DNA of 64,000 bases, from positions 62,001 to 126,000 of IMG/VR virus record IMGVR_UViG_3300027782_000027, one strand, 5' to 3'. How positions within the stretch are numbered: the first letter of the stretch is position 1; every line of letters begins with the position of its first letter. A model generated the notes under the pieces. It was not told where the DNA came from. It worked only from the letters and a program-made list of their open reading frames with translations, and searched no databases. Positions 17,361 through 35,704 of this stretch are shown here, piece by piece. The position numbers were made by a program, and so were the translations under genes.

Positions 17361-18098
17361 TTACTCTTCCTTAACATCTATTAACGAAGAGTAAATTTTC
17401 TTGAATTTTTTAATTGAAGCTCTAATCTCTTTAGTTGACATATTTGTCATTTCACGAATAGATAATAAAATTACATTTTTATTAAATTTATTATTATCTG
17501 TTGCCGGAAATATCGTTTCGTAATTGTCTAAAATATCGATAAGTGCAAAACCTAATTTTAATTCATTATCATTTAATTCATCTTCTTCTATTGTTGTTTT
17601 AATATAATCTTTTAATATCGGAATTACATTATATTCTTGAATAGGTTCAATTTCTAAATAATAAATCATTTCAGGTCTATTTTCTAAATCACTTGAAATA
17701 TCCTCATATGAAATTTTTCTATTTGTTTCTTTTTGGTCTTTTAATATTTGGCCCATAAGATAATTCTTACAAATAGTTCCAAAATATGAGTAAGCTTTCT
17801 TTTCTTTTGAAGGACTAAATTTTTCAATTTTTGTCATCAAAAAAGAATGTGTGTCGGTATGAATTTCAGTAAAATTCATATCTTTTCTATACAATTTATA
17901 TCTTCTTATTATCGAAGATATCATCTTATCTAAAGGGAATCTTAAAAATTCATTATAAATTTTATTTTTTTCCTCAGAAGTAGATGCGGTTAGAAATAAT
18001 CTAACAGCATTTTCCTCTCTTATATCAAAATAATTTTCTGTGGCCGGTTTTTTCTTCTTAGTTAAAGAATCTTGAACAGACGTTGCACTTAAAATCAT
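17361..18098 (-). CDS. Phage sigma factor (T4 gp55-like late sigma, tentative)
   Basis: Sigma region-2-like segment IEKFSPSKEKKAYSYFGTICKNYL (compare gp55 F...AYFT.I..NAF). Confidence 0.6.
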   Translation of the reverse strand: MILSATSVQDSLTKKKKPATENYFDIREENAVRLFLTASTSEEKNKIYNEFLRFPLDKMISSIIRRYKLYRKDMNFTEIHTDTHSFLMTKIEKFSPSKEKKAYSYFGTICKNYLMGQILKDQKETNRKISYEDISSDLENRPEMIYYLEIEPIQEYNVIPILKDYIKTTIEEDELNDNELKLGFALIDILDNYETIFPATDNNKFNKNVILLSIREMTNMSTKEIRASIKKFKKIYSSLIDVKEE

Positions 18099-18916
18099 TA
18101 AACATTTTCAGGTGTATATTTTATGTTTCTGTCTTGGCTAAAGAAATATTCTTTTTTTGCAGTATTAACCCAAAACTTAACTTCATTTTCTGTTAACACA
18201 TTTTCGCCATTTTTATAATCCCAAAAAATAGAACCTTCTCTTAAATTCATATGTTTATAACCAATTCTTGGTATTGTCATGAATTTAACTGAGTTATAAG
18301 TCATTCTTAATAAAAACTCGTAAGCAAATGTTAGTTTAAACCCTGGTTTAAATCCTCCAAAATCTTCAACAATTTGTTTTTTAAATACCATACCTGAAGT
18401 TTGGAAATTTTGATAACTTAATAATGTTTCATTTGTTAATATTCCCATTTCTTGTGAGAAATTAGCAGCAAATGTCGCTTCGTTTGTAAATCCAGCAAAT
18501 ACTGATTTATTATCAACATCAACAACGATTGGCATAAATACATCTACATCAGTATAAATTTCTGAATATTTTCTAACATTTTTAAACCAAATTTTAGAAA
18601 ACTCATCGTCAAATTCTAAAATACTATTCCATTCAGTTTTTGAGTTTTTAATACCTGTATTAACTTGTTCGCAAAAACTAAGCTCACCGTCAAATTTAAT
18701 CTTATTAACTTTTAAATCACCAAAATCAAAATTGTTTAAATAATTAATTAAACTTTCTTCTTCAGAGTGAACAATTATAAGTTCGGTGGGTAATATATCT
18801 TGTATAGTTAATGACTCGATACTTTTTTTAAAAAACTCGTCAAAATCTCTAACTACTGAGGTTTTTAATGGTAATATAACACTTAATTCAAATTCTTTTT
18901 TCATATTATTGTTCAA
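18098..18916 (-). CDS. GT2-family glycosyltransferase
   Basis: LSVILPL...NTGIKNSKTEWNSILEFDDEF (GT-A fold, DD motif). Confidence 0.8.
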   Translation of the reverse strand: MNNNMKKEFELSVILPLKTSVVRDFDEFFKKSIESLTIQDILPTELIIVHSEEESLINYLNNFDFGDLKVNKIKFDGELSFCEQVNTGIKNSKTEWNSILEFDDEFSKIWFKNVRKYSEIYTDVDVFMPIVVDVDNKSVFAGFTNEATFAANFSQEMGILTNETLLSYQNFQTSGMVFKKQIVEDFGGFKPGFKLTFAYEFLLRMTYNSVKFMTIPRIGYKHMNLREGSIFWDYKNGENVLTENEVKFWVNTAKKEYFFSQDRNIKYTPENV

Positions 18917-19964
18917 TTAATTGTAATTTATTTATTTCTTCTTGAAATCCTTGAGTTCGTTTACTGAAGTAATCTGAAAATAATTCAATAACGTTCTTTT
19001 CAAATTTTTGAAAATCTGAAAACTCAGATGAAGTATCTAATCCATTTTGATATAATTTTTCAGATATATTATCTTCTAACCAATTTTGGATAAATTCGGC
19101 AACGAAATCAACTAATTTAATTTCTTCTTGAATCCAAATACCATTTTCTTCATTTAACCATGAGGGAACCATCTTAGGTAATACACCTAAAACAGGAACA
19201 TTAGATTTCATAGATTCCAATGGGAAAGTCCCAAAAGAACTTGTTTTATCAATCCAAACTGATAACATACAGTCCTTTAAAGTATTAGCAAATTCTTCTT
19301 CTGAAATTCCTCTCATGTCTCTAAATGTTACCCATCTAAATTGTGGATATTTTTGATAGAAAGTTTTAATCAGATTAATTGCCTCACGTTGTTCTCTTGA
19401 AGAGACTGCGATGATTGGTTTTGCCGGAAATTTAGATGTTGTAAATACAGGTGAAACAACAGGTTCTAATATATCAATTGAGAAGTTTCTCATAATATCC
19501 GAGATATATTTTTTCTGATTTTCAGAAGTTGTTATACATTTTGTAAATCCAAATTGACTCCATACTTGTCCTGGTTGTAAAGTTTCGAAAATATGGTCGT
19601 AAGCTTGTGATAAAACAACTTTAGTACAAGGTAAATTAGTTAATTGTGACATAATATACCCAAAAATTTCAGGAATAATAATGAAATCTTCAGGTGAAAT
19701 CCCTAAATTTTGACCTTCAACAGACTGATGAGGTAAATTAGAATATTTATCACCTAACCATCCTGAAACACCAAAATAATCTGGTTTTTCATGTAACATA
19801 ATCGGATTGTATCCGTTTTCTTTTAACGTTAATCCCATCTGGTAGATATATCTTACCGACGCATTAGCATTTCCCTTTGTGTCCTGAACAAAAAAATAAA
19901 TCTTTGATTTTTTATTTTTAAGGTTTTCAATAGAACCTTCAATTTTTAAAACTCTTTCTTCCAT
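18906..19964 (-). CDS. GT-B fold (GT4-like) glycosyltransferase
   Basis: IIIPE; SSFGTFPLESMKSNVPV (compare EgFGlp.lEAma.G.PV). Confidence 0.75.
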   Translation of the reverse strand: MEERVLKIEGSIENLKNKKSKIYFFVQDTKGNANASVRYIYQMGLTLKENGYNPIMLHEKPDYFGVSGWLGDKYSNLPHQSVEGQNLGISPEDFIIIPEIFGYIMSQLTNLPCTKVVLSQAYDHIFETLQPGQVWSQFGFTKCITTSENQKKYISDIMRNFSIDILEPVVSPVFTTSKFPAKPIIAVSSREQREAINLIKTFYQKYPQFRWVTFRDMRGISEEEFANTLKDCMLSVWIDKTSSFGTFPLESMKSNVPVLGVLPKMVPSWLNEENGIWIQEEIKLVDFVAEFIQNWLEDNISEKLYQNGLDTSSEFSDFQKFEKNVIELFSDYFSKRTQGFQEEINKLQLIEQ

Positions 19965-19967
19965 ATT

Positions 19968-20228
19968 TTAATATTTGTTTATTATTTTATTATTTAATAA
20001 AGTGTTGAATGCCAATTTAAATGGTATTGATAAATTTGATTTATGACCAAGTTTTTCATCAGTTTCTTCACTTTCTGATAGAACAACATCTACCATAATT
20101 TTTATTAGTTCATATTTTACAACACTAATATGTTGTTCACTATCTCCGCTAATACTCGCGTCATATGTAACACTGTCACTAATTAAATCTAAATCAATGT
20201 AATAGTGTTCATTAAGAATTGTCAGCAT
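19968..20228 (-). CDS. Hypothetical protein
   Basis: 86-aa ORF in the operon. Confidence 0.65.
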   Translation of the reverse strand: MLTILNEHYYIDLDLISDSVTYDASISGDSEQHISVVKYELIKIMVDVVLSESEETDEKLGHKSNLSIPFKLAFNTLLNNKIINKY

Positions 20229-20817
20229 CTAATTTATTTTTTAAAATTAACTTTAGTTCTTCGATAGAATTAATTGATTCATTACAATTAATTTTTTCGT
20301 TATAAATTGTATTGAATTTAATACAATTATTATAATTAATAAGAATATTAGGGTTAGAAGTAACTATTAAATCAAAATCTCCTAAAACTTTGGACTTATT
20401 TGAATCATTATAGAATAAAATTGATTCTATTAAACATCCGAACTTTGATAGGAAAAATAAAGTTGCGGGTTTTGTTTTACCTATTTCATCTGAAATTATT
20501 ACGATATCATTTTTATCTCTAAAATCTAAATAAAAGTCATTTAAATAGTTAAAACTTAACAATTCAGTTGAGGGTGAATGACCAAAAATCTCCATGGGAA
20601 ATTCTTCGTATAAAAAACTAAAAAACTCTTCTTTTGATTGAAATGAAAAATGATTCATTAAATCTAAAGAATTAATTGGTTCATTAATTACATATTCAAA
20701 CGGGTTTTCAGATTCAGAATTTTCTAAATTATTATCTATTAAAAATTTTTCGTAAGTGGTTTTAAACTTACCTATAGTATCTCTTAAAACTCCATTAATA
20801 TCAATTCCTATCTTCAT
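20212..20817 (-). CDS. HAD-family 5'(3')-nucleotidase-like protein
   Basis: MKIGIDINGVLRD, a DxDGVL-like motif with Asn at the second Asp. Confidence 0.6.
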   Translation of the reverse strand: MKIGIDINGVLRDTIGKFKTTYEKFLIDNNLENSESENPFEYVINEPINSLDLMNHFSFQSKEEFFSFLYEEFPMEIFGHSPSTELLSFNYLNDFYLDFRDKNDIVIISDEIGKTKPATLFFLSKFGCLIESILFYNDSNKSKVLGDFDLIVTSNPNILINYNNCIKFNTIYNEKINCNESINSIEELKLILKNKLDADNS

Positions 20818-21541
20818 ATCTTTTTAACATTTCAGTAATTAATGGATTTCTAACAACATCACCATCACCAAACTCATGAACACCAATTTCGGAAATATTT
20901 TTAAATTTTTCAATAGCATCCCATAACCCTGAATGTTTTTTATCTTTATATCTATCAGTTTGTTCTAAGTCACCTGATATGAAAAATTTACTATCAGTAC
21001 CAATACGAGTTAATAATAATTTCATTTGTTTAGGAGTTGCGTTTTGAGCTTCTTCAAATATTAAAATAGAATTATCAATATTCATTCCTCTCATATACGC
21101 TAAAGCAAATACTTCAATAACCTCCATTTGTTTTAATTTCTCTCTTGCTTCTTTACCTATGATTTTATTCAATAAGTAATATGATGGGAAAATATACGGG
21201 TCTAATTTTTCTTCAACATTACCGGGTAATGAACCAAGTTTTTCTTCAGCCTCAACTGCTGGTCTAACTATAATAATCTTTTCGTAAGGTGATGTGTGGT
21301 CAGCTAATAAATCAACAGCCGCTTTCATTGCAATAAAACTTTTACCAACACCTGCCGGACCTGAACAAATTGTAATTTGATTTTTAACTAATTTATCGTA
21401 ATACTCTCTTTGACTTTGAGTTAAGAATTTATCTTTACTCTTTTTAATCATAACACTAATTTGGTCTTTTTTAGACATTCTTGGTTTAGCTTCAGTGGAA
21501 ATATACTGAGTGTCTTTGATAATTGTTTTTTTTCTTGTCAT
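20801..21541 (-). CDS. phoH: PhoH-family ATPase
   Basis: GPAGVGKS, RPAVEAEEKLGSLPG, AYMRG, EEAQN and GDLEQTD motifs. Confidence 0.93.
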   Translation of the reverse strand: MTRKKTIIKDTQYISTEAKPRMSKKDQISVMIKKSKDKFLTQSQREYYDKLVKNQITICSGPAGVGKSFIAMKAAVDLLADHTSPYEKIIIVRPAVEAEEKLGSLPGNVEEKLDPYIFPSYYLLNKIIGKEAREKLKQMEVIEVFALAYMRGMNIDNSILIFEEAQNATPKQMKLLLTRIGTDSKFFISGDLEQTDRYKDKKHSGLWDAIEKFKNISEIGVHEFGDGDVVRNPLITEMLKRYEDRN

Positions 21542-21544
21542 TAT

Positions 21545-22369
21545 TTAATTTGTGTGTAACTTTTTTGAGAATAATTGCATTTCAATTATCTGAAATTCCA
21601 ATTCAGGTATATCATATTTTATATCAAAAATTGTTGATAATGTTCTATCAACAATATATTCTGAATCAACTGGATTAATTTCAATATTTAAATTGTATGA
21701 ATTTGACAACATTTTAACTAAATCATATTTTGAGACTTGAGTTGGTGAGATGAAATGTTTAGTTCCCTTCCAAAAATCTTTGTTATTTATAATTTTTTCT
21801 ACTAATTTAGCCCATTCTAAACAAGTTATACCGTTCCAAAAATGATTCAGAAACCCATTAACTTTATTATTTTTTTGACTTTTAACCCATTCAACTAAAG
21901 ACCTATGTTGATTAATTTCTTCCCCAATTATTGAAGTTCGAATTATTGTGCAATTTTTTGGTTCCCCAATAGCCTTAGACATACCATATACATCATCAAC
22001 ATCATATTTATCTTTTTCATTATATTTCCCTTTTTTACCTGAATATACACAATCTGTTGTTGGGTGAATCATGTCCCATTTATTTTTTTCGCAAATATTT
22101 GATAACATTCTTGGAAATACTGAGTTAACTAAAATAGCATTTAAATCCCCTAATTGGTCAACTCTTGGTTTAATAGTACCAATACAATTTATGATAACGT
22201 CTCCCTGATTTACACCACAATTAATTAAAATTTCTTCTAATGTTTTTTCTGTTTGTTGAGAGGCGTCAAGAACATCTCTATTAATTTCGTTAACATTAAA
22301 TTTTTCGGATAAATAAGTGTAAACATATTTACCTAACATACCTTTTGAACCTAAAATATAAATTTTCAT
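21545..22369 (-). CDS. rmlD: dTDP-4-dehydrorhamnose reductase-like SDR
   Basis: ILGSKGMLG, INCIG, TTDCVYSG, YGMSK and IIRTSIIG motifs. Confidence 0.85.
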   Translation of the reverse strand: MKIYILGSKGMLGKYVYTYLSEKFNVNEINRDVLDASQQTEKTLEEILINCGVNQGDVIINCIGTIKPRVDQLGDLNAILVNSVFPRMLSNICEKNKWDMIHPTTDCVYSGKKGKYNEKDKYDVDDVYGMSKAIGEPKNCTIIRTSIIGEEINQHRSLVEWVKSQKNNKVNGFLNHFWNGITCLEWAKLVEKIINNKDFWKGTKHFISPTQVSKYDLVKMLSNSYNLNIEINPVDSEYIVDRTLSTIFDIKYDIPELEFQIIEMQLFSKKLHTN

Positions 22370-22371
22370 AA

Positions 22372-22406
22372 TTTTTTTTATTTTTTTTATTTTTTTTATT
22401 TTTTTA
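22372..22406. repeat. (T8A)3-T7A microsatellite (A-rich leader on the minus strand)
   Basis: Read directly between the rmlC and rmlD genes. Confidence 0.8.
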
Positions 22407-22823
22407 TCTAAAATCTTCTTCCCATATATTCCAATTATCGTGCGGTAATCTTATATCGTCACCTAAACTTTCTTCTAATGAAGTAGTTGAAAAGAAAATA
22501 ACTGAAGTGTTATCTTCTAAATTTTTAAAACCATTATAATGGTTTGGTGGAATAAATAATACTTTTGGTTGTTTTGAACTTAAAATATATTTTGTAATTT
22601 CTTCAGTTTCCATGTCAACAATCCCAATAAGGGCGGTTCCACTCGAAACATAAACATATTTCCCTTCTTTTTTGTGACCATGCCACGCTCTTATAAAACC
22701 TTGCCTATGATTTTCAACTTGATAAAATCTTTTTATATTTTCAAAATTGAAGTCATTAACAAATCTAACCGAACCCCTGTCATCAACAGAGATACCACCA
22801 TTCATTAATTTTTTTGTGTCCAT
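22404..22823 (-). CDS. rmlC: dTDP-4-dehydrorhamnose 3,5-epimerase-like cupin
   Basis: DDRGSV, IRAWHGH and LFIPPNHYNGF motifs. Confidence 0.8.
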   Translation of the reverse strand: MDTKKLMNGGISVDDRGSVRFVNDFNFENIKRFYQVENHRQGFIRAWHGHKKEGKYVYVSSGTALIGIVDMETEEITKYILSSKQPKVLFIPPNHYNGFKNLEDNTSVIFFSTTSLEESLGDDIRLPHDNWNIWEEDFR

Positions 22824-23779
22824 AATAATTCTTTTTGATTTTTTTTATTTGTTAAAAACGCTCCATTGTGGTAAACTTTATCTTCAGGATTTTCAATTCT
22901 ATTTTCTTCAAATAAAGTTACCATTCTTAATACCTCATCTTCAACGGTTGTAATTGGTTTATATTTAAAAACTTTTAAAGATTTTGAATTATCAACACGA
23001 TAATTTCTAGCATCTTGAAAAGATATTTCAGTGTATGTTACTTTAGTATTAGGTACTATTTTAGCAACACGTTCACCTAGTTCTTTAATTATAACATTTT
23101 CTTTTGATAAAACAAAAATTCCGGGATACTTTTCTTTACATGCCTCTGTAATGTATCCTGCAATATCTTTAACCGCAATTATTGGTCTCCATTGTTCACC
23201 TCCATTAATAGTTATAGTACCTTCTTTTACCGCTTTCATAGTTAAAACATTAACAACTAAATCCATTCTAATTCTAGAATATGTGTCACCAAGACCAAAG
23301 ACAGTTCCTAATCTGAAAATTGTCCCATTTTTATCTAAAATGTGTTTTTCGGCTTTAAGTTTTGTTGAAGCGTATGATGATAATGGATTTGTTTCACTTA
23401 ATTCATCTAATATACCATCTTGAGCTCCGTAAACTGAACACGTAGACATAAAAATTAAATGTTTATCAGATGGAACAATATTACAAAAATTTTTGATAGA
23501 ATTATAATTAATTTCTTCAGTTAAAAATGGGTCAACACTACAAGCCGGGTCACCAACTAGAGCCGCCATTAAAACTATAATATCAAAATCTTTAGATACT
23601 TCATAAAGTTTATTAGTATCTCTAATGTCTCCATAAATAAAAGAAACATCTTTTAAATATCTATTTTCATATAATAAATTATCGTAAATAGTTATATCAA
23701 ACCCTTCTCTAATAAGATAATCTGATGTTAATCCTCCGATGTAACCGGCACCACCGACTAATAAAACTTTTTCTTTCAT
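22805..23779 (-). CDS. NAD-dependent nucleotide-sugar epimerase/dehydratase
   Basis: VGGAGYIG, STCSVYG, YASTK and RLGTVFG motifs. Confidence 0.9.
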   Translation of the reverse strand: MKEKVLLVGGAGYIGGLTSDYLIREGFDITIYDNLLYENRYLKDVSFIYGDIRDTNKLYEVSKDFDIIVLMAALVGDPACSVDPFLTEEINYNSIKNFCNIVPSDKHLIFMSTCSVYGAQDGILDELSETNPLSSYASTKLKAEKHILDKNGTIFRLGTVFGLGDTYSRIRMDLVVNVLTMKAVKEGTITINGGEQWRPIIAVKDIAGYITEACKEKYPGIFVLSKENVIIKELGERVAKIVPNTKVTYTEISFQDARNYRVDNSKSLKVFKYKPITTVEDEVLRMVTLFEENRIENPEDKVYHNGAFLTNKKNQKELLWTQKN

Positions 23780-23807
23780 TATTTTATAAATTTATATTTT
23801 TTTACTT

Positions 23808-24632: not shown

Positions 24633-24639
24633 ATATATT

Positions 24640-25563: not shown

Positions 25564-25585
25564 AATATATTTTATTTTTTATTTT

Positions 25586-26557: not shown

Positions 26558-26566
26558 ATTTTATTT

Positions 26567-28114: not shown

Positions 28115-28137
28115 ATTATTTTTTTAATTTTAACATT

Positions 28138-28866: not shown

Positions 28867-28870
28867 GTAT

Positions 28871-29659: not shown

Positions 29660-30455
29660 TATTTATAGAGTATTTATTTTCAATTTTAGTAACATAATTA
29701 AATAAGTAATTATTTTTATTCCACATTTCCCAAAATTTATTATCCATATTTACTCGATTTGTTACTGTCGCATTTTTATCATTTCCGTAATGCCATAAAT
29801 GAAGTGCTACAAAATCATCAATGAACCTAACATTTAATTTAATACGAATTCTATGTATAAATTCATCATCATCAAACGCCACTCCAGATGCAAATCTTTC
29901 GTCAAATCCTCCTAATTCTTTTAAATCTTTTTTAGTTATTGCGGTACAAAAATGATAAGATTTTGGTCGATATAATGAATGATTATACCATCCTTCATCA
30001 CCATCATTAACTACTGATATTTTTCTATACGTTGAGGGGTTAATAAATGATTTAAAATCATTCAGTTGTAACACTGCTGATGTTTGAATTTCACTTAAAG
30101 AATAACAAGCAAATGATAAATAATCATTATCAATCAAATTCTTGTTTACAAAATTTAAAATATCATCTGAATGTAAACATTCAGGATTTTGTATAATAAT
30201 TTTATCACCTAACGCTTGATTAAATCCGATGTTAAAGGGAACACATGGATTTACATACCATTTATCTTTTTTTTCTAATCTAATAATTTTTAAAAAAGGA
30301 AATTCGTTTACCAAATCTTCTAATCTTTCATCTTCGTGACTACAGTCATCAACTGCAATAACTTCAAAATCAGTAAAACTACTTTTTTTAAAACTTTCTA
30401 ATGTTTTAATAAATATTTTTTTTCGATTGTGATATGCGGTAACGATAGAAATCAT
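29652..30455 (-). CDS. GT2-family glycosyltransferase (GT7-like C-terminus)
   Basis: ISIVTAYHNR, VDDCS, LGGFDERF..G.AFDDDEF and HLWH motifs. Confidence 0.85.
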   Translation of the reverse strand: MISIVTAYHNRKKIFIKTLESFKKSSFTDFEVIAVDDCSHEDERLEDLVNEFPFLKIIRLEKKDKWYVNPCVPFNIGFNQALGDKIIIQNPECLHSDDILNFVNKNLIDNDYLSFACYSLSEIQTSAVLQLNDFKSFINPSTYRKISVVNDGDEGWYNHSLYRPKSYHFCTAITKKDLKELGGFDERFASGVAFDDDEFIHRIRIKLNVRFIDDFVALHLWHYGNDKNATVTNRVNMDNKFWEMWNKNNYLFNYVTKIENKYSINNV

Positions 30456-31510
30456 AATTTTTCTTTTAATATTTCAATAATTTTGTCTGATGTTTTACCA
30501 TCTCCTAACCAATCTGTGTTTGAGTTATAATTTGATAGATAATTAAATGAATCAATCCACGAAACATCTAATTCATTTACATTAATCATATATGAACATC
30601 CATACTCAACCGATTCAGGCCTTTCAGTAAAATCTCTCGGTACAATAACTGGAGTGTTAAATAAACAAGGTTCTTCTTGAGCTGTGCCTGAATCTGAAAT
30701 TATAAATTTAGAATGATACATTTCATTTATATAATTTTTAAAAGATAATAAATTAATTACTTTAATATTTTCTAAATCTAAATTAAATTCGGAAATTTTA
30801 TCAATAGTTCTTTTAAATGATAACATTTCAATAGGTATCCCAAATCTTTGGGAACAAATATTAGCGTAGTTTAATATGTTTTTTAAACGTTCCTTACTAT
30901 TAAAATTTTCAGGTCTATGAATATCTAAAATTATTTTATTATTTTTTTTAGATTTATTTAATTCTATTTTATTTGCAACCTCTTTAATTGTATTTCCTAC
31001 AACATAAATTGATTTTGGATTAATTGATTCTCTAATCAATTTTTCTTTGTAATTATCATGATAAACAAATAAAAGGTCACTACAATGGTCACAAACAATT
31101 CTATTAATTTCTTCAAGCATTCTTTTATCGCCCGACCTCATACCCGCCTCAATGTGAGCAATTTTATACCCCTCTTTTTTAAGAGGTACGGATGCTAATG
31201 CTGAATTTGAATCACCTAAAAAAATTATTAAATCAGGATTTATATTTTCGTTACGAATTAAGTCAATTATTTTGACAGATAAGTCTGCCTGTTGATGAAA
31301 ATGTTCTTTTCCATTTGAACCAATCTCTAAATTAAAATCAGGTTTACGTATTGATAACTCATCAAAAAATACATCTGACAACATTTTATCATAATGTTGT
31401 CCAGTATGTACTAATATATGATTAAAATTATTATCTAATTTTTTAAAAATTTCAGACATTCTGATGAAGTCAGGTCTAATACCAGTAATAGTTATAATTG
31501 TTTTTTTCAT
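30452..31510 (-). CDS. wecB: UDP-GlcNAc 2-epimerase (non-hydrolysing)
   Basis: GIRPDFI, HTGQHYD, HIEAGMRS, PEEINR-like and SDSGTAQEE motifs. Confidence 0.93.
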   Translation of the reverse strand: MKKTIITITGIRPDFIRMSEIFKKLDNNFNHILVHTGQHYDKMLSDVFFDELSIRKPDFNLEIGSNGKEHFHQQADLSVKIIDLIRNENINPDLIIFLGDSNSALASVPLKKEGYKIAHIEAGMRSGDKRMLEEINRIVCDHCSDLLFVYHDNYKEKLIRESINPKSIYVVGNTIKEVANKIELNKSKKNNKIILDIHRPENFNSKERLKNILNYANICSQRFGIPIEMLSFKRTIDKISEFNLDLENIKVINLLSFKNYINEMYHSKFIISDSGTAQEEPCLFNTPVIVPRDFTERPESVEYGCSYMINVNELDVSWIDSFNYLSNYNSNTDWLGDGKTSDKIIEILKEKL

Positions 31511-33144
31511 TTGTTTAAAATATCAAGATATGTTTGTCTTATTGTTTTGGAGACATTTGACGATTTAAATTTATTAATATCGTCAGGAATATTAAATAAT
31601 TCTTTATTAATAATGTTTCCTGTATTATCTACATTATATATCCATCCTGGTTTACCACACATCCACCCCTCAATAGTTGTCCTACCTAAAAGTATTCCGG
31701 CAGTTTCAAAACATTTATGAATATATTTGTCCACATCTAATGTGGGCCCGTGAAATTTAACATGAGAATTTTTAGTTATTTCTGAAAGAAAATTTGATTT
31801 GTTTTCACCAACTAACCATAATTCTTTATTGTTTTCTTTAGTGTGGTCAACTAAATCTCTTATAGTTTTTTCTCGTAAATAATCGATTGAACCAACAAAT
31901 AAAACGTAATTTTCAGAATTTAAATTTTTATTAAAAAATTTAGTTTCATCTATCGGATTATAGATAACATCAACCATGTTATCAGGTATATTAAAATTAG
32001 AAATAATGTGTTCTTTAATCTCAGGTCTAATTGCAATGTATTTTTTAATTGATTGATGAACAACTGGATTTTCTAATTCAATAACCTCAGAATGTATTGT
32101 GGATATTTTATTAACATTTGGATATAACATATTCATTATATCAACAATAGGTTTATGTTGACAATGAATGATATCGAAATGTGTCTCTGAAATTTTATAA
32201 TAATTGTTTGGCATTGATGGTTTAGGACCTTCTGGTGTCATTACAATCCATTTACCATCACCTAATTTATATCCCGGTGTTTCTTTTATATTTTTAACTT
32301 TAATCCCTAATTTAGTTGCCATTAACACTAATGGACCATTAGTTTCGGACGCAACAATTGTAACGTCACAGTTTTGTTTTACCAAATTTTTTGCAAGTTC
32401 AAAAACATACATTTCAGAACCTGTAAATTTCTGAAAAAATAAACATGATATTAACACGTTTAACCTACTATCTTCGGTAAACTTTATTTTTTTAGGTAAA
32501 AATTCTGAATATTTCTCAACAAATAAATTTCTATTTTCCTCCCACTTTTCATTCGTCATTCCAATAGATTTATGTGTTAATCTGATATTAGTTAGAACAC
32601 CAATTTTAACATTCTCTAAGAAATTTTTAAAACAAAAATTAACATCATACATGTGAAACCCACTAACCGTCTCATCAAAATTAAATTTAATCTTTTGTTT
32701 GTTAATTGCTATAAAAACACCGTCAACAACAACTACTTCTTTAATATTATTTCCTAATGAATCAGAATATTTTGATTCCCATTTTTTACCCTCAGATTCA
32801 TGATTTACTATACCATACATCTTTGACCTATCTTCCCACCACATTCCACTTATTGGCATTTCTGTTGTACCTGCCATACCAAATATTCCGTAATCAGGAT
32901 TTTTATCAAATTGTTTAACTAATTTTGATGCCCAATTATTTGTGTCAAAATAGATGTCGTCATGACATAATACAATTATATCAAATTTGGATTCAGATAT
33001 AATTTCGTTATAAACCTCAGAAAGATTTTTTTCACCATTATTGACTTTTTCAATAATTTGAACTTTGGGGTGACCCGAAGATTTTTTTAAATACTCTTGA
33101 AATTCTGAGTTAGAATTTCGTGTGCTATATCCTATTGTTATCAT
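31507..33144 (-). CDS. Two-domain glycosyltransferase (GT-A plus GT-B fusion)
   Basis: N-terminal VLCHDD...VDGVF...FHMYD; C-terminal GSEMYV...GRTTIEGWMCG. Confidence 0.8.
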   Translation of the reverse strand: MITIGYSTRNSNSEFQEYLKKSSGHPKVQIIEKVNNGEKNLSEVYNEIISESKFDIIVLCHDDIYFDTNNWASKLVKQFDKNPDYGIFGMAGTTEMPISGMWWEDRSKMYGIVNHESEGKKWESKYSDSLGNNIKEVVVVDGVFIAINKQKIKFNFDETVSGFHMYDVNFCFKNFLENVKIGVLTNIRLTHKSIGMTNEKWEENRNLFVEKYSEFLPKKIKFTEDSRLNVLISCLFFQKFTGSEMYVFELAKNLVKQNCDVTIVASETNGPLVLMATKLGIKVKNIKETPGYKLGDGKWIVMTPEGPKPSMPNNYYKISETHFDIIHCQHKPIVDIMNMLYPNVNKISTIHSEVIELENPVVHQSIKKYIAIRPEIKEHIISNFNIPDNMVDVIYNPIDETKFFNKNLNSENYVLFVGSIDYLREKTIRDLVDHTKENNKELWLVGENKSNFLSEITKNSHVKFHGPTLDVDKYIHKCFETAGILLGRTTIEGWMCGKPGWIYNVDNTGNIINKELFNIPDDINKFKSSNVSKTIRQTYLDILNK

Positions 33145-33710
33145 ATTCCAGTACTACCAAATCCGTTTTCACCACGGTCTTTATCATTTATTTGATTAAC
33201 CTCAACTAAATTAACCCATCGTCCTGTAACACATCTTGCGACAACTGCTTGGGCTACTTTCATTCCCTTTTCAATTTTAAACTCTGACTGATTTGTATTA
33301 AAAATAATAACTTTAATCTCTCCTGTATATCCTTCATCTACGGTACCAGGTGAATTTAAAACCATTAAACCTTGATTAATGGCTAAACCACTTTTTGACC
33401 TAACTTGAACTTCAAAATCTTGAGGTAAATCAAAATATATACCTGTTGGAATTAAGGCTCTACCAAACGGAGGTATAATAATTTCTTCATTTGAATATAA
33501 ATCAAATCCACTATCAGATGGGTAATTGTATTTTAATTTTTTATTATTATTTGATTTATATTTTATAGTGATTTTACCATCAAATATTTTTTCAAAATCA
33601 CCTTCAATTTCACCTATATCTAAATTTAAATTTTTTTCACCTTCATTATCTATTTCTTTTAACATTTTTGAAAGTTCATCTAATTTTATATTAAATTGTT
33701 CTTGATTCAT
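33141..33710 (-). CDS. dut: Trimeric dUTPase
   Basis: SGFDL, RSKSG, GTVDEGYTGE, AQAV and RGENGFGSTG motifs. Confidence 0.95.
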   Translation of the reverse strand: MNQEQFNIKLDELSKMLKEIDNEGEKNLNLDIGEIEGDFEKIFDGKITIKYKSNNNKKLKYNYPSDSGFDLYSNEEIIIPPFGRALIPTGIYFDLPQDFEVQVRSKSGLAINQGLMVLNSPGTVDEGYTGEIKVIIFNTNQSEFKIEKGMKVAQAVVARCVTGRWVNLVEVNQINDKDRGENGFGSTGI

Positions 33711-34405
33711 AAATTTGTTAATTTAATTAAAACTTTTATTAATACCTCAACATCTTTTTCACAATAATCTTGTATCTCTTGGTATTTGTTTTCATTCCAA
33801 AATGCGTTATGGACTTTATTACCTGTTACCTCCATATTTTTAGGACTTTCAATACCAAGAGATACACACATTAATTCTAATGAACTGATAGCTCCAAATT
33901 GTCCGTATTGCCAAATTTCTTTTGTGTCAATCGCTTTAATTTCCCACGGTTTAGTATCGTAAGACGGTAAGATAGATGATGGTAAAATACCATTTATTAA
34001 CATTCTTTTTGCCAATACAGGAATATCAAAATTCTTAAGGTTATGTCCGCAAAGAATAAAACCTAATTTGTCAACACGATTTAATAGTGTGTTAGCGTCT
34101 TTAAGTAATACTTTTTCGTCTGAGTTAAAGAAACTTTGTTTTTTAATATCACCCTTTGGGTCAACAAATCCTACTGAAACACAAACAATTTTAGAAAATT
34201 CAGGAACTAATGCCGCACGGTTAACAAAAATTTCGTCCAAACTTAATTCACTATCTTCAGGAAACCTTTTTTTAAACCAATCTAAATAATTAATAAATTG
34301 AAAATGAAGTTCAGGATAATCCTTTTTGAAATTTTCATAATTACTTGAAACTCCTACAGTTTCAATGTCAATAAATAAGATTTTGTGTAATGGATGCTTT
34401 ATCAT
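33707..34405 (-). CDS. Stand-alone PolB-type 3'-5' exonuclease (DEDDy)
   Basis: FIDIET, GHNLKNFDIP and YCEKDV motifs. Confidence 0.85.
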   Translation of the reverse strand: MIKHPLHKILFIDIETVGVSSNYENFKKDYPELHFQFINYLDWFKKRFPEDSELSLDEIFVNRAALVPEFSKIVCVSVGFVDPKGDIKKQSFFNSDEKVLLKDANTLLNRVDKLGFILCGHNLKNFDIPVLAKRMLINGILPSSILPSYDTKPWEIKAIDTKEIWQYGQFGAISSLELMCVSLGIESPKNMEVTGNKVHNAFWNENKYQEIQDYCEKDVEVLIKVLIKLTNL

Positions 34406-35616
34406 ACGATTGATTTATAAAATTCTGCTCTTGTTTTTGTTACGACATCTAAACTATAGTGTTTAGAAACATGTTCATATAGTCTTTCACCCATATCAAT
34501 TCTCATATTTGGATTTTGGACTAATTTCTTAACATATTTTGCCCAATCACTGTGATTTCTTGCGTCATCGACTAGTAATGCGTTCCCATCAGTAAACTCA
34601 CCATTCTTCATTGCGTGTTTTAAGTCAATTGTATAAGGTCCGTAATTAGTTGCAATTAACGCTTTCTTATAAAAACCTGCTTCAATAACTTTAAGTTGTG
34701 ATTTTACTTTGTTAAACATATGTTGTTTAATTGGTGCCAAAGATATATCAAATTTAGAGTAACTACGGGCGTAAGATGTTACGGGTTTTGTCCAAACTCT
34801 TCTATAAGGTTGGTTTTCCTCATTTTCATATGGTGTTTGAACAAATAATTCTAAATGGTTTTTATATTCAGGTGTAACGATTGAATAATTATTTGTAAAT
34901 ATTTTTTCGTAATCATACCATACGGTTTCGTGTGGTTTAATTGGTCTTCTTGTTTGTTCACCTGTCTGTTGGTTAATTTCTGTCATCATACCGCGAGTAT
35001 CAAAACCACAAACAACAAACTGTAAATTTTTCTGAATATCAGAAAGTTTAGATACCATACCATCAAGTAACATCAAATCATGTAGGTGTGAAGAACCTCC
35101 TAACCACCCAACTCTTACCAAGTCAGATTCTTCAGTCGGTTCATTAAATTGAGCCTCTTTATGGTCAATTGCGTTAGGAAAAATTACAACATTTTTATTA
35201 TGTTTTTTTATTTCATCAGCAAATAACTCAGTTGTTGTAGTTACATATTTTGCTACTTTTAAATTCGCAACAATTTTTTCGTGTATTTTTTCTTGAACGA
35301 TTAGTTGATGAAGTGGGTGTTCTTTACCAGGTAACCAATAGTCATCTAAATCACATACTGTAATAATACCTAAAGCGTTAAGAATTGGAACTATTTGTAC
35401 TGACTTATCCATATCTTGACCAAGAGAACGATGGTAATGTATAATTTGGTAGTTTTTAAAATAATTTAAATTAGTTAAATCAGGATTGAATTCAATATCA
35501 ATGTGAAAATCGTCTCCATATAGAGTTTGTAAATGTGTATGTGGAGTTATTGACCTAAATCTACCGACACCAGTAGTATCAGACGGGACTACTAAAACTT
35601 TTATCTTTTCTTTCAT
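34402..35616 (-). CDS. GT-B fold glycosyltransferase
   Basis: DLDDYW, VGWLGGSSHLHDL, DISLAP and KSQLKVIEAG motifs. Confidence 0.85.
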   Translation of the reverse strand: MKEKIKVLVVPSDTTGVGRFRSITPHTHLQTLYGDDFHIDIEFNPDLTNLNYFKNYQIIHYHRSLGQDMDKSVQIVPILNALGIITVCDLDDYWLPGKEHPLHQLIVQEKIHEKIVANLKVAKYVTTTTELFADEIKKHNKNVVIFPNAIDHKEAQFNEPTEESDLVRVGWLGGSSHLHDLMLLDGMVSKLSDIQKNLQFVVCGFDTRGMMTEINQQTGEQTRRPIKPHETVWYDYEKIFTNNYSIVTPEYKNHLELFVQTPYENEENQPYRRVWTKPVTSYARSYSKFDISLAPIKQHMFNKVKSQLKVIEAGFYKKALIATNYGPYTIDLKHAMKNGEFTDGNALLVDDARNHSDWAKYVKKLVQNPNMRIDMGERLYEHVSKHYSLDVVTKTRAEFYKSIV

Positions 35617-35623
35617 AAGTTAA

Positions 35624-35652
35624 ATGATAATCAAAAATAAAAGATATTTCAA
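35624..35652 (-). promoter_or_regulatory. Sigma70-type promoter TTGAAA-N17-TATCAT heading the glycosylation operon
   Basis: -35 at 35652-35647 and -10 at 35629-35624, just upstream of ATG 35616. Confidence 0.6.
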
Positions 35653-35660
35653 CAATAATA

Positions 35661-35684: not shown

Positions 35685-35704
35685 CTATAATTTTTTAGGT
35701 TTTT

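What the first reader, a model, noticed from the sequence alone, without database searches (positions are those of the whole stretch)
18098..35616. ~18 kb phage glycosylation operon: about ten glycosyltransferases plus nucleotide-sugar pathways
Seen: a co-oriented, overlapping gene run with GT2, GT4-like, GT17, fucosyltransferase-like and GT-A/GT-B fusion enzymes, plus gmd, rmlC, rmlD, an epimerase, wecB, a DegT aminotransferase, an LbH acetyltransferase and a cupin. It is interleaved with phoH, dut and an exonuclease and ends at the sigma gene. I saw no wzx, wzy, ABC exporter or undecaprenyl initiating transferase. Established: these enzymes make deoxy, amino and acetamido sugars, and some giant viruses and phages glycosylate their own virions. 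Inference: a lipid-carrier-independent pathway that builds a complex glycan on virion proteins (the Thr/Pro stalks, capsid or sheath inserts); host-surface remodelling and DNA modification are alternatives.
Basis: partly seen in the sequence, partly recalled or inferred. Interest (0 to 1): 0.8.

Follow-up and report, generated by a model that had tools for sequence, protein, structure and literature searches.

The report
Jumbo-phage glycan operon with swappable cassette
A freshwater jumbo phage carries an 18 kb block of sugar-making and sugar-attaching genes, part fixed and part swapped between near-identical strains, that probably coats its own threonine/proline-rich virion proteins with sugars, although this is not proven.

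Summary
Window 18098-35616 is one minus-strand run of 22 tightly packed genes. It has nine glycosyltransferase (GT) genes with ten GT domains, eight nucleotide-sugar enzymes, and phoH, dut and an exonuclease. A weak gp55-like sigma gene follows it.

It is phage DNA, not a host chimera. T4-type head, tail and replication genes flank it. Independent lake metagenomes span the cassette/core junction.

Four GTs, dut, the exonuclease, phoH and two small ORFs are a clade-wide frame. Window 21545-31510 is a hypervariable slot whose content is replaced between near-identical backbones.

None of 910 island-side ORFs in 58 relatives has two or more membrane-like segments.

One core GT resembles Agt, a cytoplasmic enzyme that extends glycans on proteins. 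Thr/Pro mucin-like proteins carry the late-gene motif TATTTAT in 69 of 69 relatives. The island lacks that motif.

GATC is absent from the window, which argues against blanket DNA glycosylation.

Best reading (about 0.47): cytoplasmic, lipid-carrier-independent glycosylation of virion proteins. Host-envelope remodelling stays open. This is a new variant of a known kind.

The parts
35624..35686 (-). Terminator-like hairpin (35686-35665), then sigma-70-like hexamers TTGAAA-N17-TATCAT (35652-35624). Probable start of the island's transcription unit.
   Evidence: The hairpin and the TTGAA(A/T) box are conserved in close relatives. No TATTTAT late motif here.
34402..35616 (-). Core GT-B glycosyltransferase, 404 aa
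   Evidence: PHROG 7162 glycosyltransferase, E=4.5e-45. Present in 76 of 80 related loci. AF2 model pLDDT 71. Foldseek top hits are the GT4 enzymes MshA, BshA, GlgM, PglA and SdgB. No T4 DNA glucosyltransferase in the top 50. Homologues lie in a four-GT tandem in Phapecoctavirus ESCO5.
33707..34405 (-). 3'-5' exonuclease (PolB-exo-like); part of the core frame
   Evidence: Pfam DNA_pol_B_exo2, E=7e-14. PHROG 25228, E=7e-36. In 78 of 80 loci.
33141..33710 (-). dUTPase; part of the core frame
   Evidence: Pfam dUTPase, E=3.5e-27. PHROG 135, E=1.2e-50. In 79 of 80 loci.
31507..33144 (-). Core two-domain glycosyltransferase (N-terminal GT-A plus C-terminal GT-B); fixed upstream border of the variable slot
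   Evidence: Pfam Glyco_tranf_2_5, E=3.7e-28, and Glyco_transf_4, E=1.1e-12. In 80 of 80 loci at 59-100% identity. AF2 pLDDT 88; GT-A resembles majastridin and GT-B resembles MshA/BshA. More than 3000 homologues; in the top 120 the longest contig is 328,564 bp, and some carry a third, GT25 domain.
30452..31510 (-). Cassette: WecB-like non-hydrolysing UDP-GlcNAc 2-epimerase
   Evidence: Pfam Epimerase_2, E=4.9e-66. NCBIfam wecB 203.9 bits against a cut-off of 210.
29652..30455 (-). Cassette: GT2 glycosyltransferase
   Evidence: Pfam Glycos_transf_2, E=2.3e-9, above the gathering score.
28871..29659 (-). Cassette: GT17 glycosyltransferase
   Evidence: Pfam Glyco_transf_17, E=1.9e-26.
28138..28866 (-). 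Cassette: GT2-like glycosyltransferase (weak by sequence)
   Evidence: Pfam GT2, E=8e-3. Atlas features 0.99 with 211 shared, matching viral GT2 clusters.
27704..28114 (-). Cassette: WbuC-like cupin
   Evidence: NCBIfam cupin_WbuC, E=1.8e-9; 37.6 bits against a cut-off of 42.
27180..27707 (-). Cassette: left-handed beta-helix sugar N-acyltransferase-like
   Evidence: Hexapep, E=2.5e-5. NeuD/PglB/VioB family, E=2.4e-10. All hits are below curated cut-offs.
26567..27190 (-). Cassette: short (207 aa) DegT-like protein. It keeps the SFxxxK...G.GG lysine motif but lacks the C-terminal domain.
   Evidence: Pfam DegT, E=1.1e-14. Not split: it overlaps the upstream gene. Conserved short homologues of 200-244 aa occur in L100, L128 and L133.
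25586..26557 (-). Cassette: GDP-mannose 4,6-dehydratase
   Evidence: Pfam, E=1.1e-111. NCBIfam gmd 380 bits against a cut-off of 415. Nearest cellular homologues are 64-77% identical and mostly Bacteroidota or other FCB-group bacteria, plus two Pelagibacteraceae at 65%.
24640..25563 (-). Cassette: GT-B-like glycosyltransferase (weak)
   Evidence: Pfam GT1 families, E=2.5e-3. PHROG 2170 glycosyltransferase, E=1.9e-6.
23808..24656 (-). Cassette: candidate fucosyltransferase (FUT8/NodZ/POFUT-like); lead only
   Evidence: No Pfam, NCBIfam or PHROG hit. Atlas features 0.94-0.98 to FUT8_N_cat, NodZ and O-FucT clusters.
22805..23779 (-). Cassette: SDR NDP-sugar epimerase/dehydratase
   Evidence: Pfam Epimerase, E=2.8e-26.
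22404..22823 (-). Cassette: RmlC-like cupin (3,5-epimerase-like or FdtA-like)
   Evidence: Pfam dTDP_sugar_isom, E=5e-9, and FdtA, E=1.3e-6. Far below the rmlC equivalog cut-off.
21545..22369 (-). Cassette: RmlD-like 4-reductase; last gene of the variable slot
   Evidence: Pfam RmlD_sub_bind, E=1.4e-16. Found only in the closest relatives.
20801..21541 (-). PhoH; fixed downstream border of the variable slot
   Evidence: Pfam PhoH, E=1.4e-62. Lies 4.1 to more than 10 kb from the fusion GT in relatives.
19968..20817 (-). Two core ORFs of unknown function (201 aa and 86 aa). The 201-aa one starts with a HAD/NT5C-like motif in which E and N replace the two Asp residues.
   Evidence: No family hit. 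Conserved in 30-32 loci. Consensus from alignment A5.
18906..19964 (-). Core GT-B glycosyltransferase related to Agt/AmGGT (GT4), which extends glycans on proteins or free oligosaccharides in the cytoplasm
   Evidence: Profile A2 against PDB 8xsg, E=5.7e-14 over about 250 residues. Function of AmGGT/Agt from PMC12159676.
18098..18916 (-). Core GT-A-like glycosyltransferase
   Evidence: Pfam GT2, E=6.4e-4. Profile A4 against PDB GT-A 3bcv, E=1.4e-3. Conserved at 60-64% identity.
17361..18098 (-). gp55-like late sigma candidate; last gene of the unit. A TATTTAT motif follows at 17344.
   Evidence: PHROG 234, E=8.7e-4. T4 gp55 is the top PDB hit, E=0.19. Motif position.
38290..41214 (+). 974-aa late protein with a Thr/Pro mucin-like stretch of about 150 aa (residues about 711-860); best acceptor candidate
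   Evidence: TATTTAT lies 14 nt upstream and upstream of 69 of 69 homologues. Thr/Pro tracts of 25-622 residues in Thr/Pro-rich ORFs of most relatives' loci. The N-terminal part gives LamG/ConA-like leads.
1..1122 (+). Second Thr/Pro-rich ORF (at least 160 aa of TPT repeats). It runs off the left end of the window and lies just upstream of the portal gene.
   Evidence: Thr/Pro-rich ORFs lie in the head-gene module of 16 of 35 related MCP loci.

Best explanation
The island is a phage-borne glycosylation system that works in the cytoplasm and has two tiers.

Shown:
- One promoter-proximal unit of 22 soluble proteins.
- It lacks the TATTTAT motif that marks the head and tail genes.
- It is followed by a gp55-like sigma candidate.

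Inferred pathway:
- Before late genes switch on, Gmd converts host GDP-mannose to GDP-4-keto-6-deoxymannose.
- The RmlC-like, RmlD-like and SDR enzymes turn that intermediate into a 6-deoxyhexose.
- The short DegT-like protein and the LbH acyltransferase may turn it into a 4-acetamido-4,6-dideoxyhexose.
- The WecB-like enzyme, perhaps with the cupin, converts host UDP-GlcNAc to a ManNAc-type or 6-deoxy-HexNAc-type donor.
- No sugar-1-phosphate nucleotidyltransferase is encoded, so the host pools feed the pathway.

Inferred glycan assembly:
- Four clade-conserved GTs lay down a conserved inner glycan directly on a phage-encoded acceptor. These are the 404-aa GT-B, the GT-A/GT-B fusion, the Agt-like GT-B and a GT-A.
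- The five cassette GTs add strain-specific outer sugars.
- The most likely acceptors are the Thr/Pro mucin-like tracts of late proteins (38290-41214 and the ORF at 1-1122).
- These would be glycosylated as they are made and carried on the virion.
- Recombination between the fixed flanks (fusion GT and phoH) swaps the cassette and creates glycan 'serotypes' among otherwise near-identical phages.
For: - Phage context: portal, major capsid protein, T4 prohead protease, sheath, baseplate, PolB and helicase flank the island.
- The same architecture occurs in 80 IMG/VR loci.
- Contigs from independent lake runs of 2020 and 2024 span 29001-35000 and 29001-34427 at about 98.8% identity.
- Core and cassette: the core genes are in 76-80 of 80 loci, while the cassette genes are in only 2-10, apart from gmd homologues (22).
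- The slot measures 4.1 to more than 10 kb. It holds GT2, GT6, GT8, GT10, GT11, GT25 and GT47 enzymes, FkbM and TylF methyltransferases, UDP-glucose dehydrogenase and DegT.
- L082, L083 and L086 have 90-97% identical flanks but a different cassette. L088-L090 have more distant flanks but the same cassette at 86-99% identity.
- No membrane machinery: no window protein has a clear transmembrane segment, and 0 of 910 island-side ORFs in 58 relatives have two or more.
- The core GT at 18906-19964 matches Agt/AmGGT at E=5.7e-14. Agt extends glucose on glycopeptides in a cytoplasmic protein-glycosylation system (PMC12159676).
- Thr/Pro tracts of 25-622 residues occur in ORFs flanking the island in most relatives and in the head module of 16 of 35 loci.
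- TATTTAT lies within 60 nt upstream of 16 of 58 window genes (expected 1.3). It lies within 70 nt upstream of 69 of 69 homologues of the Thr/Pro protein. Only 27 of 910 island-side ORFs have it, which is about the chance rate.
- The fusion GT family has more than 3000 members; in the top 120 the longest contig is 328,564 bp.
- Precedent: mycobacteriophages glycosylate capsid and tail-tube proteins with their own GTs (Freeman 2023, as cited in PMC12363180). Chloroviruses and mimiviruses do the same (own knowledge).
Against: - No experiment or sequence feature here shows a glycan on any protein.
- No recognisable initiating protein O-glycosyltransferase or HMW1C/NGT-type enzyme was found.
- The Foldseek hits for two core GTs are generic GT4/GT-A folds that act on small molecules, lipids, polymers or proteins alike.
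- Thr/Pro linkers are common in unglycosylated proteins.
- Soluble GTs normally also build undecaprenyl-linked glycans, so the lack of transmembrane proteins does not exclude use of host carrier, flippase and ligase.
- The Thr/Pro proteins are not shown to be virion components. There was no match to isolated phages.
- The island is not under the late motif, so it is not co-regulated with its proposed substrates.
- Only 64 kb of a roughly 240 kb genome was seen.
Confidence: 0.47

Rival explanations
1. Host-envelope remodelling. The soluble phage GTs and sugar enzymes act at the inner face of the membrane on host undecaprenyl-linked intermediates (O-antigen, capsule, or the Bacteroidota O-glycan). 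The host initiating transferase, flippase and ligase do the rest. The infected cell's surface changes, which blocks superinfection or stops progeny from sticking to debris.
For: - The gene content is that of LPS or capsule loci: gmd, wecB, WbuC, GT2/GT10/GT11/GT25 enzymes and FkbM methyltransferases.
- Hypervariability and cassette swapping mirror O-antigen loci.
- The nearest cellular Gmd sequences are mostly from Bacteroidota and other FCB-group bacteria.
- The island looks early or middle, not late.
- This is the reading usually offered for the P-SSM2, S-SCSM1 and S-SCSM2R cyanophage clusters (PMC12801897).
Against: - Not one polytopic membrane protein occurs among 910 island-side ORFs across dozens of different cassettes. 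In cellular loci (own knowledge) the structure-specific Wzx and Wzy travel with the variable genes.
- Four GTs are conserved across a clade whose hosts' surface glycans should differ. That points to a conserved, phage-supplied acceptor.
- The phage looks lytic and T4-like. No integrase was seen in the window, and known seroconversion modules belong to temperate phages and are membrane proteins (own knowledge).
- The closest solved relative of one core GT works on soluble or protein-bound glycans.
Confidence: 0.27
2. DNA hypermodification. The GTs attach sugars to hydroxymethylated bases of the phage DNA to evade restriction, as in T4 and the 5hmC glycan clusters.
For: - The core GTs are interleaved with dut, an exonuclease, phoH and a nucleotidase-like ORF. 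They sit near PolB and the helicase.
- Homologues of the 404-aa GT lie next to primase and DNA polymerase genes in Phapecoctavirus.
- Expression appears non-late.
- The moraphage paper lists this option.
Against: - GATC is absent from the 64 kb window (169 expected). GCGC and CTAG are strongly depleted. 121 of 160 related loci also have no GATC, while 39 relatives have normal numbers; the twenty-three of those 39 that were fetched via the fusion GT carry that core GT. Selection therefore acts on the bare sequence, independently of the GTs.
- The window holds no hydroxymethylase, TET/JBP enzyme, C5-methyltransferase or base-exchange enzyme.
- No T4 alpha- or beta-glucosyltransferase fold is among the top 50 Foldseek hits.
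- A ten-domain, methylated and fucosylated glycan on DNA has no precedent.
Confidence: 0.06
3. Another soluble acceptor. The enzymes may build a cytoplasmic oligosaccharide, glycolipid or small-molecule glycoside. Alternatively they may glycosylate host proteins for takeover or counter-defence. In either case the product is not a virion component.
For: - The top structural neighbours of two core GTs (MshA, BshA, GlgM, tetrahydrobiopterin glucosyltransferase) act on small soluble acceptors.
- AmGGT itself prefers free oligosaccharides.
- The timing appears early or middle.
Against: - A conserved four-GT core plus 5-10 variable GTs and methyltransferases is excessive for modifying a single host target.
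- It does not explain the clade-wide, rapidly varying Thr/Pro proteins.
- It does not explain the diversifying pattern of the cassette.
Confidence: 0.12

Closest known systems
Mycobacteriophage virion glycosylation (Che8, Corndog, Myrna; Freeman et al. 2023, seen here only as cited in PMC12363180 and PMC12619734)
   Same: Phage-encoded soluble GTs. The acceptors are Ser/Thr/Pro-rich regions of structural proteins. The reaction is cytoplasmic and independent of a lipid carrier.
   Different: Those phages use a few genes in 50-160 kb actinophages, and the glycans are shown by mass spectrometry. Here there are 9 GT genes and 8 sugar enzymes, arranged as a conserved core plus a swappable cassette, and there is no biochemical evidence.
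Chlorovirus (PBCV-1) capsid glycosylation and Mimivirus/Megavirus fibril glycosylation clusters
   Same: - Virus-encoded GMD and other NDP-sugar pathways.
- Multi-domain GT-A/GT-B and methyltransferase enzymes.
- Fucose, rhamnose and methylated sugars.
- Strain-specific glycans built in the cytoplasm.
- BFVD neighbours of the fusion GT include Marseillevirus, Megaviridae, HaV01 and CeV multi-GT proteins.
   Different: Those are eukaryotic giant viruses and are unrelated by descent. The acceptor there is the major capsid protein (atypical N-glycans) or fibril proteins. Here the virus is a T4-like phage of bacteria.
LPS / cell-wall gene clusters of large cyanomyoviruses (P-SSM2, S-SCSM1, S-SCSM2R; PMC12801897)
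   Same: T4-like aquatic myophages with 13 or more GTs (GT2, GT10, GT11, GT25), NDP-sugar epimerases, RmlC and perosamine-type aminotransferases. The function is untested.
   Different: - The host phylum and phage lineage differ.
- In cyanophages the genes are described as clusters meant to change the host surface.
- No core-plus-cassette frame, Agt-like GT or Thr/Pro late proteins have been reported there.
'Moraphages' (Perez-Hernandez et al. 2025, PMC12619734)
   Same: - Freshwater jumbo phages of 200-307 kb with predicted Bacteroidota hosts.
- The major capsid protein is related to that of Rhodothermus phage RM378.
- Four separate core orthogroups are putative GTs.
- This matches the four core GTs, the freshwater origin, the capsid-protein neighbours and the Gmd donors found here.
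   Different: Membership could not be tested because their sequences are not in the collections searched. The paper only lists possible GT roles. It does not describe the variable slot, the cassette swapping or the Thr/Pro proteins.
NGT/Agt cytoplasmic protein N-glycosylation of Actinobacillus/Haemophilus (PMC12159676)
   Same: A soluble GT4 enzyme that extends a protein-bound sugar in the cytoplasm. The phage's core 352-aa GT is a sequence relative (E=5.7e-14).
   Different: No HMW1C/NGT (GT41) initiating enzyme was found. The Thr/Pro repeats lack N-X-S/T sequons, so any linkage would be O-linked. Identity is low and donor specificity is unknown.
Bacterial Wzx/Wzy-dependent O-antigen and capsule loci
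   Same: NDP-sugar genes plus GTs in one co-oriented block between conserved flanks. The content is hypervariable and exchanged by recombination.
   Different: No initiating phosphoglycosyltransferase, flippase, polymerase, chain-length regulator or exporter occurs in any variant.

Membership tests
Virus-encoded virion glycosylation system (mycobacteriophage / chlorovirus type) | The virus encodes its own soluble glycosyltransferases, with or without NDP-sugar enzymes | tested here: met
   Nine GT genes and eight sugar enzymes, none with a transmembrane segment.
Virus-encoded virion glycosylation system (mycobacteriophage / chlorovirus type) | Structural proteins offer an acceptor region (Ser/Thr/Pro-rich tails or loops) | tested here: inconclusive
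   Two Thr/Pro mucin-like proteins are present. One carries the late motif in 69 of 69 relatives. Their presence in the virion is not shown.
Virus-encoded virion glycosylation system (mycobacteriophage / chlorovirus type) | Glycans are physically present on virion proteins | not testable with these tools
   This needs glycoproteomics or staining of purified particles.
Wzx/Wzy- or ABC-dependent surface polysaccharide locus | Initiating phosphoglycosyltransferase, flippase, polymerase or exporter encoded with the GTs | tested here: not met
   No polytopic membrane protein in the window or among 910 island-side ORFs of 58 relatives. No such Pfam family appeared.
Wzx/Wzy- or ABC-dependent surface polysaccharide locus | NDP-sugar genes plus GTs between conserved flanks, with hypervariable content | tested here: met
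Phage DNA glycosylation (T4 alpha/beta-GT; 5hmC/5hmU hypermodification clusters) | An enzyme that makes the hydroxymethylated base (dNMP hydroxymethylase, TET/JBP plus C5-methyltransferase) next to the GTs | tested here: not met
   None among the 58 window ORFs scanned. The rest of the genome was not seen.
Phage DNA glycosylation (T4 alpha/beta-GT; 5hmC/5hmU hypermodification clusters) | The GT is related to known DNA glucosyltransferases | tested here: not met
   No such hit by PHROGs, PDB profile search or Foldseek top 50 for the two core GTs modelled.
Phage DNA glycosylation (T4 alpha/beta-GT; 5hmC/5hmU hypermodification clusters) | Modified DNA relaxes selection against restriction sites | tested here: not met
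   GATC count is 0 against 169 expected. GCGC is at 0.22x and CTAG at 0.37x. The trait varies among relatives: twenty-three fusion-GT-bearing loci have normal GATC numbers and most have none.
Seroconverting phage module (GtrABC / Oac type) | Membrane-embedded GtrA flippase, GtrB bactoprenol GT and a serotype-specific Gtr, or an acyltransferase_3 protein | tested here: not met
   No transmembrane proteins and no such Pfam hits.
NGT/Agt cytoplasmic N-glycosylation system | Agt-type GT4 elongating enzyme | tested here: met
   Profile A2 against 8xsg (AmGGT), E=5.7e-14 over about 250 residues.
NGT/Agt cytoplasmic N-glycosylation system | HMW1C/NGT (GT41) initiating enzyme and acceptors rich in N-X-S/T sequons | tested here: not met
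   The only hit is a noise-level HMW1C_N match (E=0.0085) inside the SDR epimerase. The Thr/Pro repeats read N-T-V/I/Q, which is not a sequon.
Moraphage lineage (PMC12619734) | Freshwater jumbo phage, Bacteroidota-type gene donors, four core GT orthogroups, and a capsid protein near those of RM378 and uncultured huge phages | tested here: inconclusive
   All listed traits agree (contig of 240,759 bp). No sequence comparison with the published genomes was possible.

The most novel reading that the evidence does not exclude
A very abundant clade of freshwater jumbo phages builds O-antigen-like, hypervariable glycans directly on mucin-like Thr/Pro stalks of its own virions. It does so in the cytoplasm and without any lipid carrier. 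A four-GT conserved core supplies the inner glycan, and a recombining cassette supplies the outer part. Near-identical phages would then differ in virion 'glycan serotype'. In Bacteroidota hosts, such displayed glycans could even act as bait for the host's surface glycan-binding uptake systems. The bait idea is pure speculation.
Probability: 0.4. Interest if true: 0.75.

Novelty: new variant of a known kind. Interest (0 to 1): 0.56.

Why it matters
If the glycans sit on virions, this would be the most elaborate protein-glycosylation system known in a bacteriophage. It would also be the first with an O-antigen-style variable cassette.

The lineage is common. At least 20 lake metagenome runs from 2016 to 2024 hold this very sequence. 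The core fusion GT has more than 3000 relatives.

It would give a tractable bacterial-virus parallel to giant-virus glycobiology. It would provide a set of soluble, carrier-independent GTs and a 'mini' DegT-like family for glyco-engineering. It would also suggest that phage particles, like bacterial cells, are under diversifying selection on their surface sugars.

If the island instead remodels the host envelope, it would test a twenty-year-old guess about 'LPS genes' in aquatic myophages. Either result is reachable by expressing a few genes.

Tried and rejected
- Megablast of the island against 50,697 GenBank phages gave no match.
- tblastn against isolated phages gave no match for the fusion GT, the Agt-like GT or the N-terminal part of the Thr/Pro protein.
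- PDB profile searches found nothing useful for the 404-aa GT, the fusion GT or the 201-aa core ORF.
- Foldseek of both modelled core GTs returned only generic GT4/GT-A neighbours. It cannot tell a protein acceptor from a lipid or small-molecule acceptor.
- The two Thr/Pro proteins share no C-terminal domain.
- The 282-aa ORF shows no pairwise similarity to the GT10 and GT11 enzymes of relatives.
- The Bacteroidota -7 box TAnnTTTG upstream of the first gene is not above chance: 3 genes observed against 2.3 expected. I did not use it.
- I guessed that runs holding 0.76 of the sampled words carried the backbone with another cassette. That was wrong. Read laying shows full-length contigs with about 1.2% divergence.
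- No RNA run was listed, so expression timing rests on motifs only.
- The HMW1C_N hit in the SDR enzyme is noise.
- Chimeric host contig: rejected. The evidence is phage genes on both sides, GC content like the neighbouring genes, conserved synteny in 80 loci, and independent assemblies.

Full report
**What is there**

Window 18098-35616 is filled by 22 ORFs on the minus strand. No gap exceeds 34 nt and many ORFs overlap by 1-19 nt.

Read from the promoter-proximal end, the genes are:
- a 404-aa GT-B glycosyltransferase (GT; PHROG 7162, E=4.5e-45);
- a PolB-exo-like 3'-5' exonuclease;
- dUTPase;
- a GT-A (Glyco_tranf_2_5) plus GT4 fusion;
- a WecB-like 2-epimerase;
- a GT2;
- a GT17;
- a GT2-like protein;
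- a WbuC-like cupin;
- an LbH acyltransferase-like protein;
- a 207-aa DegT-like protein;
- Gmd;
- a weak GT-B;
- a 282-aa ORF whose only support as a fucosyltransferase is language-model similarity to FUT8/NodZ/POFUT clusters;
- an SDR epimerase;
- an RmlC-like cupin;
- an RmlD-like reductase;
- PhoH;
- two unknown ORFs of 201 and 86 aa;
- a 352-aa GT-B;
- a GT-A-like protein.

That makes nine GT genes with ten catalytic domains and eight nucleotide-sugar enzymes.

The gene that follows (17361-18098) is only weakly gp55-like. PHROG late sigma scores E=8.7e-4, and T4 gp55 is the top PDB hit at E=0.19.

'rmlC' and 'rmlD' are family-level calls that fall far below the equivalog cut-offs. Gmd and WecB fall just short of theirs.

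No sugar-1-phosphate nucleotidyltransferase is present. The pathways must therefore start from host GDP-mannose and UDP-GlcNAc (inference).

**It is phage DNA**

The island is flanked by a portal gene, T4-type prohead protease, a major capsid protein (MCP) with an insert, PolB, a helicase, a 1071-aa sheath and a T4 baseplate protein.

GC content of the island genes (0.22-0.31) matches that of neighbouring non-structural genes.

The window's own contig is almost certainly IMGVR_UViG_3300027782_000027, which is 240,759 bp (L091, 100% identity).

At least 20 freshwater or lake metagenome runs from 2016-2024 hold window 30000-36000. Contigs from two independent runs, dated 2020 and 2024, span 29001-35000 and 29001-34427. 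Each shows 72 differences. The cassette/core junction is therefore real and not an assembly chimera.

**The island is a frame plus a cassette**

tblastn of all window proteins against 80 related IMG/VR loci shows which genes are conserved.
- The fusion GT, dut, the exonuclease and the 404-aa GT are present in 76-80 of 80 loci.
- PhoH, the 201-aa and 86-aa ORFs, the 352-aa GT, the GT-A and the sigma-like gene are conserved wherever the fetched flank reaches them.
- The genes between the fusion GT and phoH (window 21545-31510) are found in only 2-10 loci, apart from gmd homologues (22).

In relatives this slot is 4.1 to more than 10 kb long. It holds other genes of the same kind:
- GT2, GT6, GT8, GT10, GT11, GT25 and GT47-like enzymes;
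- five FkbM, two TylF and further methyltransferase clusters;
- UDP-glucose dehydrogenase, SDR enzymes and full-length DegT.

Swapping is recent. L082, L083 and L086 have flanking genes 83-98% identical to the window, with the fusion GT at 90-93%. They carry none of the window's cassette. In L082 the slot instead holds GT2, GT8, GT2, GT10 and FkbM genes.

L088-L090 have a more distant fusion GT (82%) and dut (69%). They share the window's cassette at 86-99% identity.

**No membrane machinery anywhere**

No window protein has a convincing hydrophobic 19-mer. Of 910 island-side ORFs of at least 100 aa in 58 relatives, none has two or more such segments.

In cellular O-antigen and capsule loci the structure-specific Wzx and Wzy genes travel with the variable genes (own knowledge). 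They are missing from every cassette variant seen here. That is the strongest argument that the product is not a lipid-carrier-built, exported polymer specified by the phage alone.

**Leads to the acceptor**

1. A profile of the core 352-aa GT matches PDB 8xsg at E=5.7e-14 over about 250 residues. 8xsg is AmGGT, a homologue of Agt. Agt is the alpha-1,6-glucosyltransferase that extends glucose on glycopeptides in the cytoplasmic NGT/Agt protein-glycosylation system (PMC12159676). No NGT/HMW1C partner was found.
2. The 974-aa protein at 38290-41214 carries about 150 residues of Thr/Pro repeats. A second such ORF runs off the left end of the window (1-1122), next to the portal gene.
3. Thr/Pro tracts of 25-622 residues occur in ORFs flanking the island in most of the 80 relatives. 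They also occur in the head-gene module of 16 of 35 MCP loci.
4. The motif TATTTAT lies within 60 nt upstream of 16 of 58 window genes, against 1.3 expected. These include the portal, protease, sheath, baseplate-region and tail genes, and the Thr/Pro protein.
5. The motif lies within 70 nt upstream of the Thr/Pro protein in 69 of 69 relatives. It lies within 60 nt upstream of only 27 of 910 island-side ORFs, which is about the chance rate.
6. The island itself starts behind a terminator-like hairpin and sigma-70-like hexamers that are conserved in close relatives.

My inference is that the enzymes are made before the late proteins. The Thr/Pro proteins belong to the late, presumably structural, class.

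**Against DNA glycosylation**

GATC does not occur once in 64 kb. Shuffles give 169 ± 12, and a Markov model gives z = -22.5. GCGC is at 0.22x and CTAG at 0.37x of expectation.

121 of 160 related loci (2.5 Mb in all) also lack GATC. The other 39 have normal numbers; twenty-three of these were fetched via the fusion GT and so carry that core GT.

Selection from restriction enzymes is thus acting on the naked sequence, independently of the GTs.

The window holds no base-hydroxymethylating or TET-type enzyme. The two modelled core GTs resemble MshA, BshA, GlgM, PglA and majastridin, not the T4 DNA glucosyltransferases.

Some pull remains toward the DNA reading. The core GTs are interleaved with dut and the exonuclease. 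Homologues of the 404-aa GT sit in a four-GT tandem beside replication genes in Phapecoctavirus.

**What remains open**

Soluble GTs also build undecaprenyl-linked glycans. A phage that borrows the host's initiating enzyme, flippase and ligase could therefore remodel LPS, capsule or the Bacteroidota O-glycan. This is the usual guess for the comparable clusters of cyanomyoviruses P-SSM2, S-SCSM1 and S-SCSM2R, which have 13 GTs and 22 'cell wall' genes (PMC12801897).

I rank this reading second, for three reasons:
- the clade-wide core GTs imply a conserved acceptor;
- no variant carries membrane machinery;
- the phage looks lytic.

Nothing here shows a sugar on a protein.

**Relation to the literature**

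The lineage matches the 'moraphages' of Perez-Hernandez et al. 2025 (PMC12619734). Those are freshwater jumbo phages of 200-307 kb with predicted Bacteroidota hosts. Their capsid protein is near that of Rhodothermus phage RM378, and four core orthogroups are putative GTs.

The traits found here agree:
- the nearest capsid proteins are LR756508, Flavobacterium phage immuto and RM378;
- the nearest cellular Gmd sequences are mostly from Sphingobacterium, Ferruginibacter, Ignavibacteria and Muribaculaceae;
- there are four core GTs.

Membership could not be tested by sequence. The paper lists DNA, host-serotype and virion glycosylation as options without deciding. It does not describe the variable slot.

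Virion glycosylation by phage GTs is established for mycobacteriophages (Freeman 2023, as cited). It is also established for chloroviruses and mimiviruses (own knowledge).

The core fusion GT has more than 3000 relatives; in the top 120 the longest contig is 328,564 bp. Some carry a third, GT25 domain.

**Verdict**

The thing is a new variant of a known kind: a phage glyco-gene island organised as a conserved four-GT frame with a recombining cassette. It most likely serves cytoplasmic glycosylation of Thr/Pro-rich late proteins (confidence about 0.47).

Rival readings and their confidences:
- host-envelope remodelling, about 0.27;
- another soluble acceptor, about 0.12;
- DNA glycosylation, about 0.06.

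Interest is 0.56.

Noticed in passing
whole window 1-64000; loci L001-L160: GATC is completely absent from the 64 kb window (about 169 expected). GCGC (0.22x) and CTAG (0.37x) are depleted. 121 of 160 related loci also have no GATC, while 39 have normal counts. This looks like lineage-specific restriction-site avoidance.
   Followed up: partly
window, e.g. 1177, 3028, 4477, 5532, 9180, 38276, 50912, 54226, 55128, 56655, 58690 (+); 13215, 17344, 38263, 45622, 47140 (-): The motif TATTTAT lies 11-42 nt upstream of 16 genes (expected 1.3), mostly head and tail genes. It is conserved upstream of 69 of 69 homologues of the Thr/Pro protein. It is a likely late-promoter element of this clade.
   Followed up: partly
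window 45623-47128 (-): A 501-aa protein has a complete Fe/Mn superoxide dismutase domain (residues 36-226) and an extension of about 270 aa of unknown function. The late-type motif precedes it.
   Followed up: no
window 26567-27190 (-); L100:15287-15925, L128:12851-13582, L133:15978-16577: A conserved family of 'mini' DegT-like proteins, 200-244 aa long. They keep the PLP-lysine motif but lack the C-terminal domain and part of the large domain. It is unclear whether they still transaminate.
   Followed up: partly
L103:17958-19112: A full-length DegT in a relative's cassette has His where the catalytic Lys usually sits, as in ColD-type 3-dehydratases (own knowledge). This hints at a 3,6-dideoxyhexose pathway in that cassette.
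   Followed up: no
window 20212-20817 (-): This core 201-aa ORF begins with a HAD/NT5C-like motif (consensus IEINGVLRD). Glu and Asn replace the two catalytic Asp residues. It had no family or PDB hit.
   Followed up: no
window 6978-8867 (+) and 50954-54169 (+): The major capsid protein (629 aa) aligns to relatives in two pieces around an insert of about 200 aa. The sheath (1071 aa) carries a very large insert relative to the profile.
   Followed up: no
window 36279-36671 (-): A small 130-aa protein with a borderline WYL-domain hit (E=3e-4) lies just upstream of the island. It is conserved in 74 of 80 relatives.
   Followed up: no
proteins P0019, P0020, P0032, P0074, P0092, P0102: Some relatives of the fusion GT are 757-765 aa long and carry a third, GT25 domain. 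These are triple-GT enzymes.
   Followed up: no
L161 (Escherichia phage ESCO5, 103356-114249): Four tandem annotated glycosyltransferases sit beside the primase/helicase, a Dam-like methyltransferase and DNA polymerase I genes. Two of them are homologues of the 404-aa core GT. The record gives no function for them.
   Followed up: no
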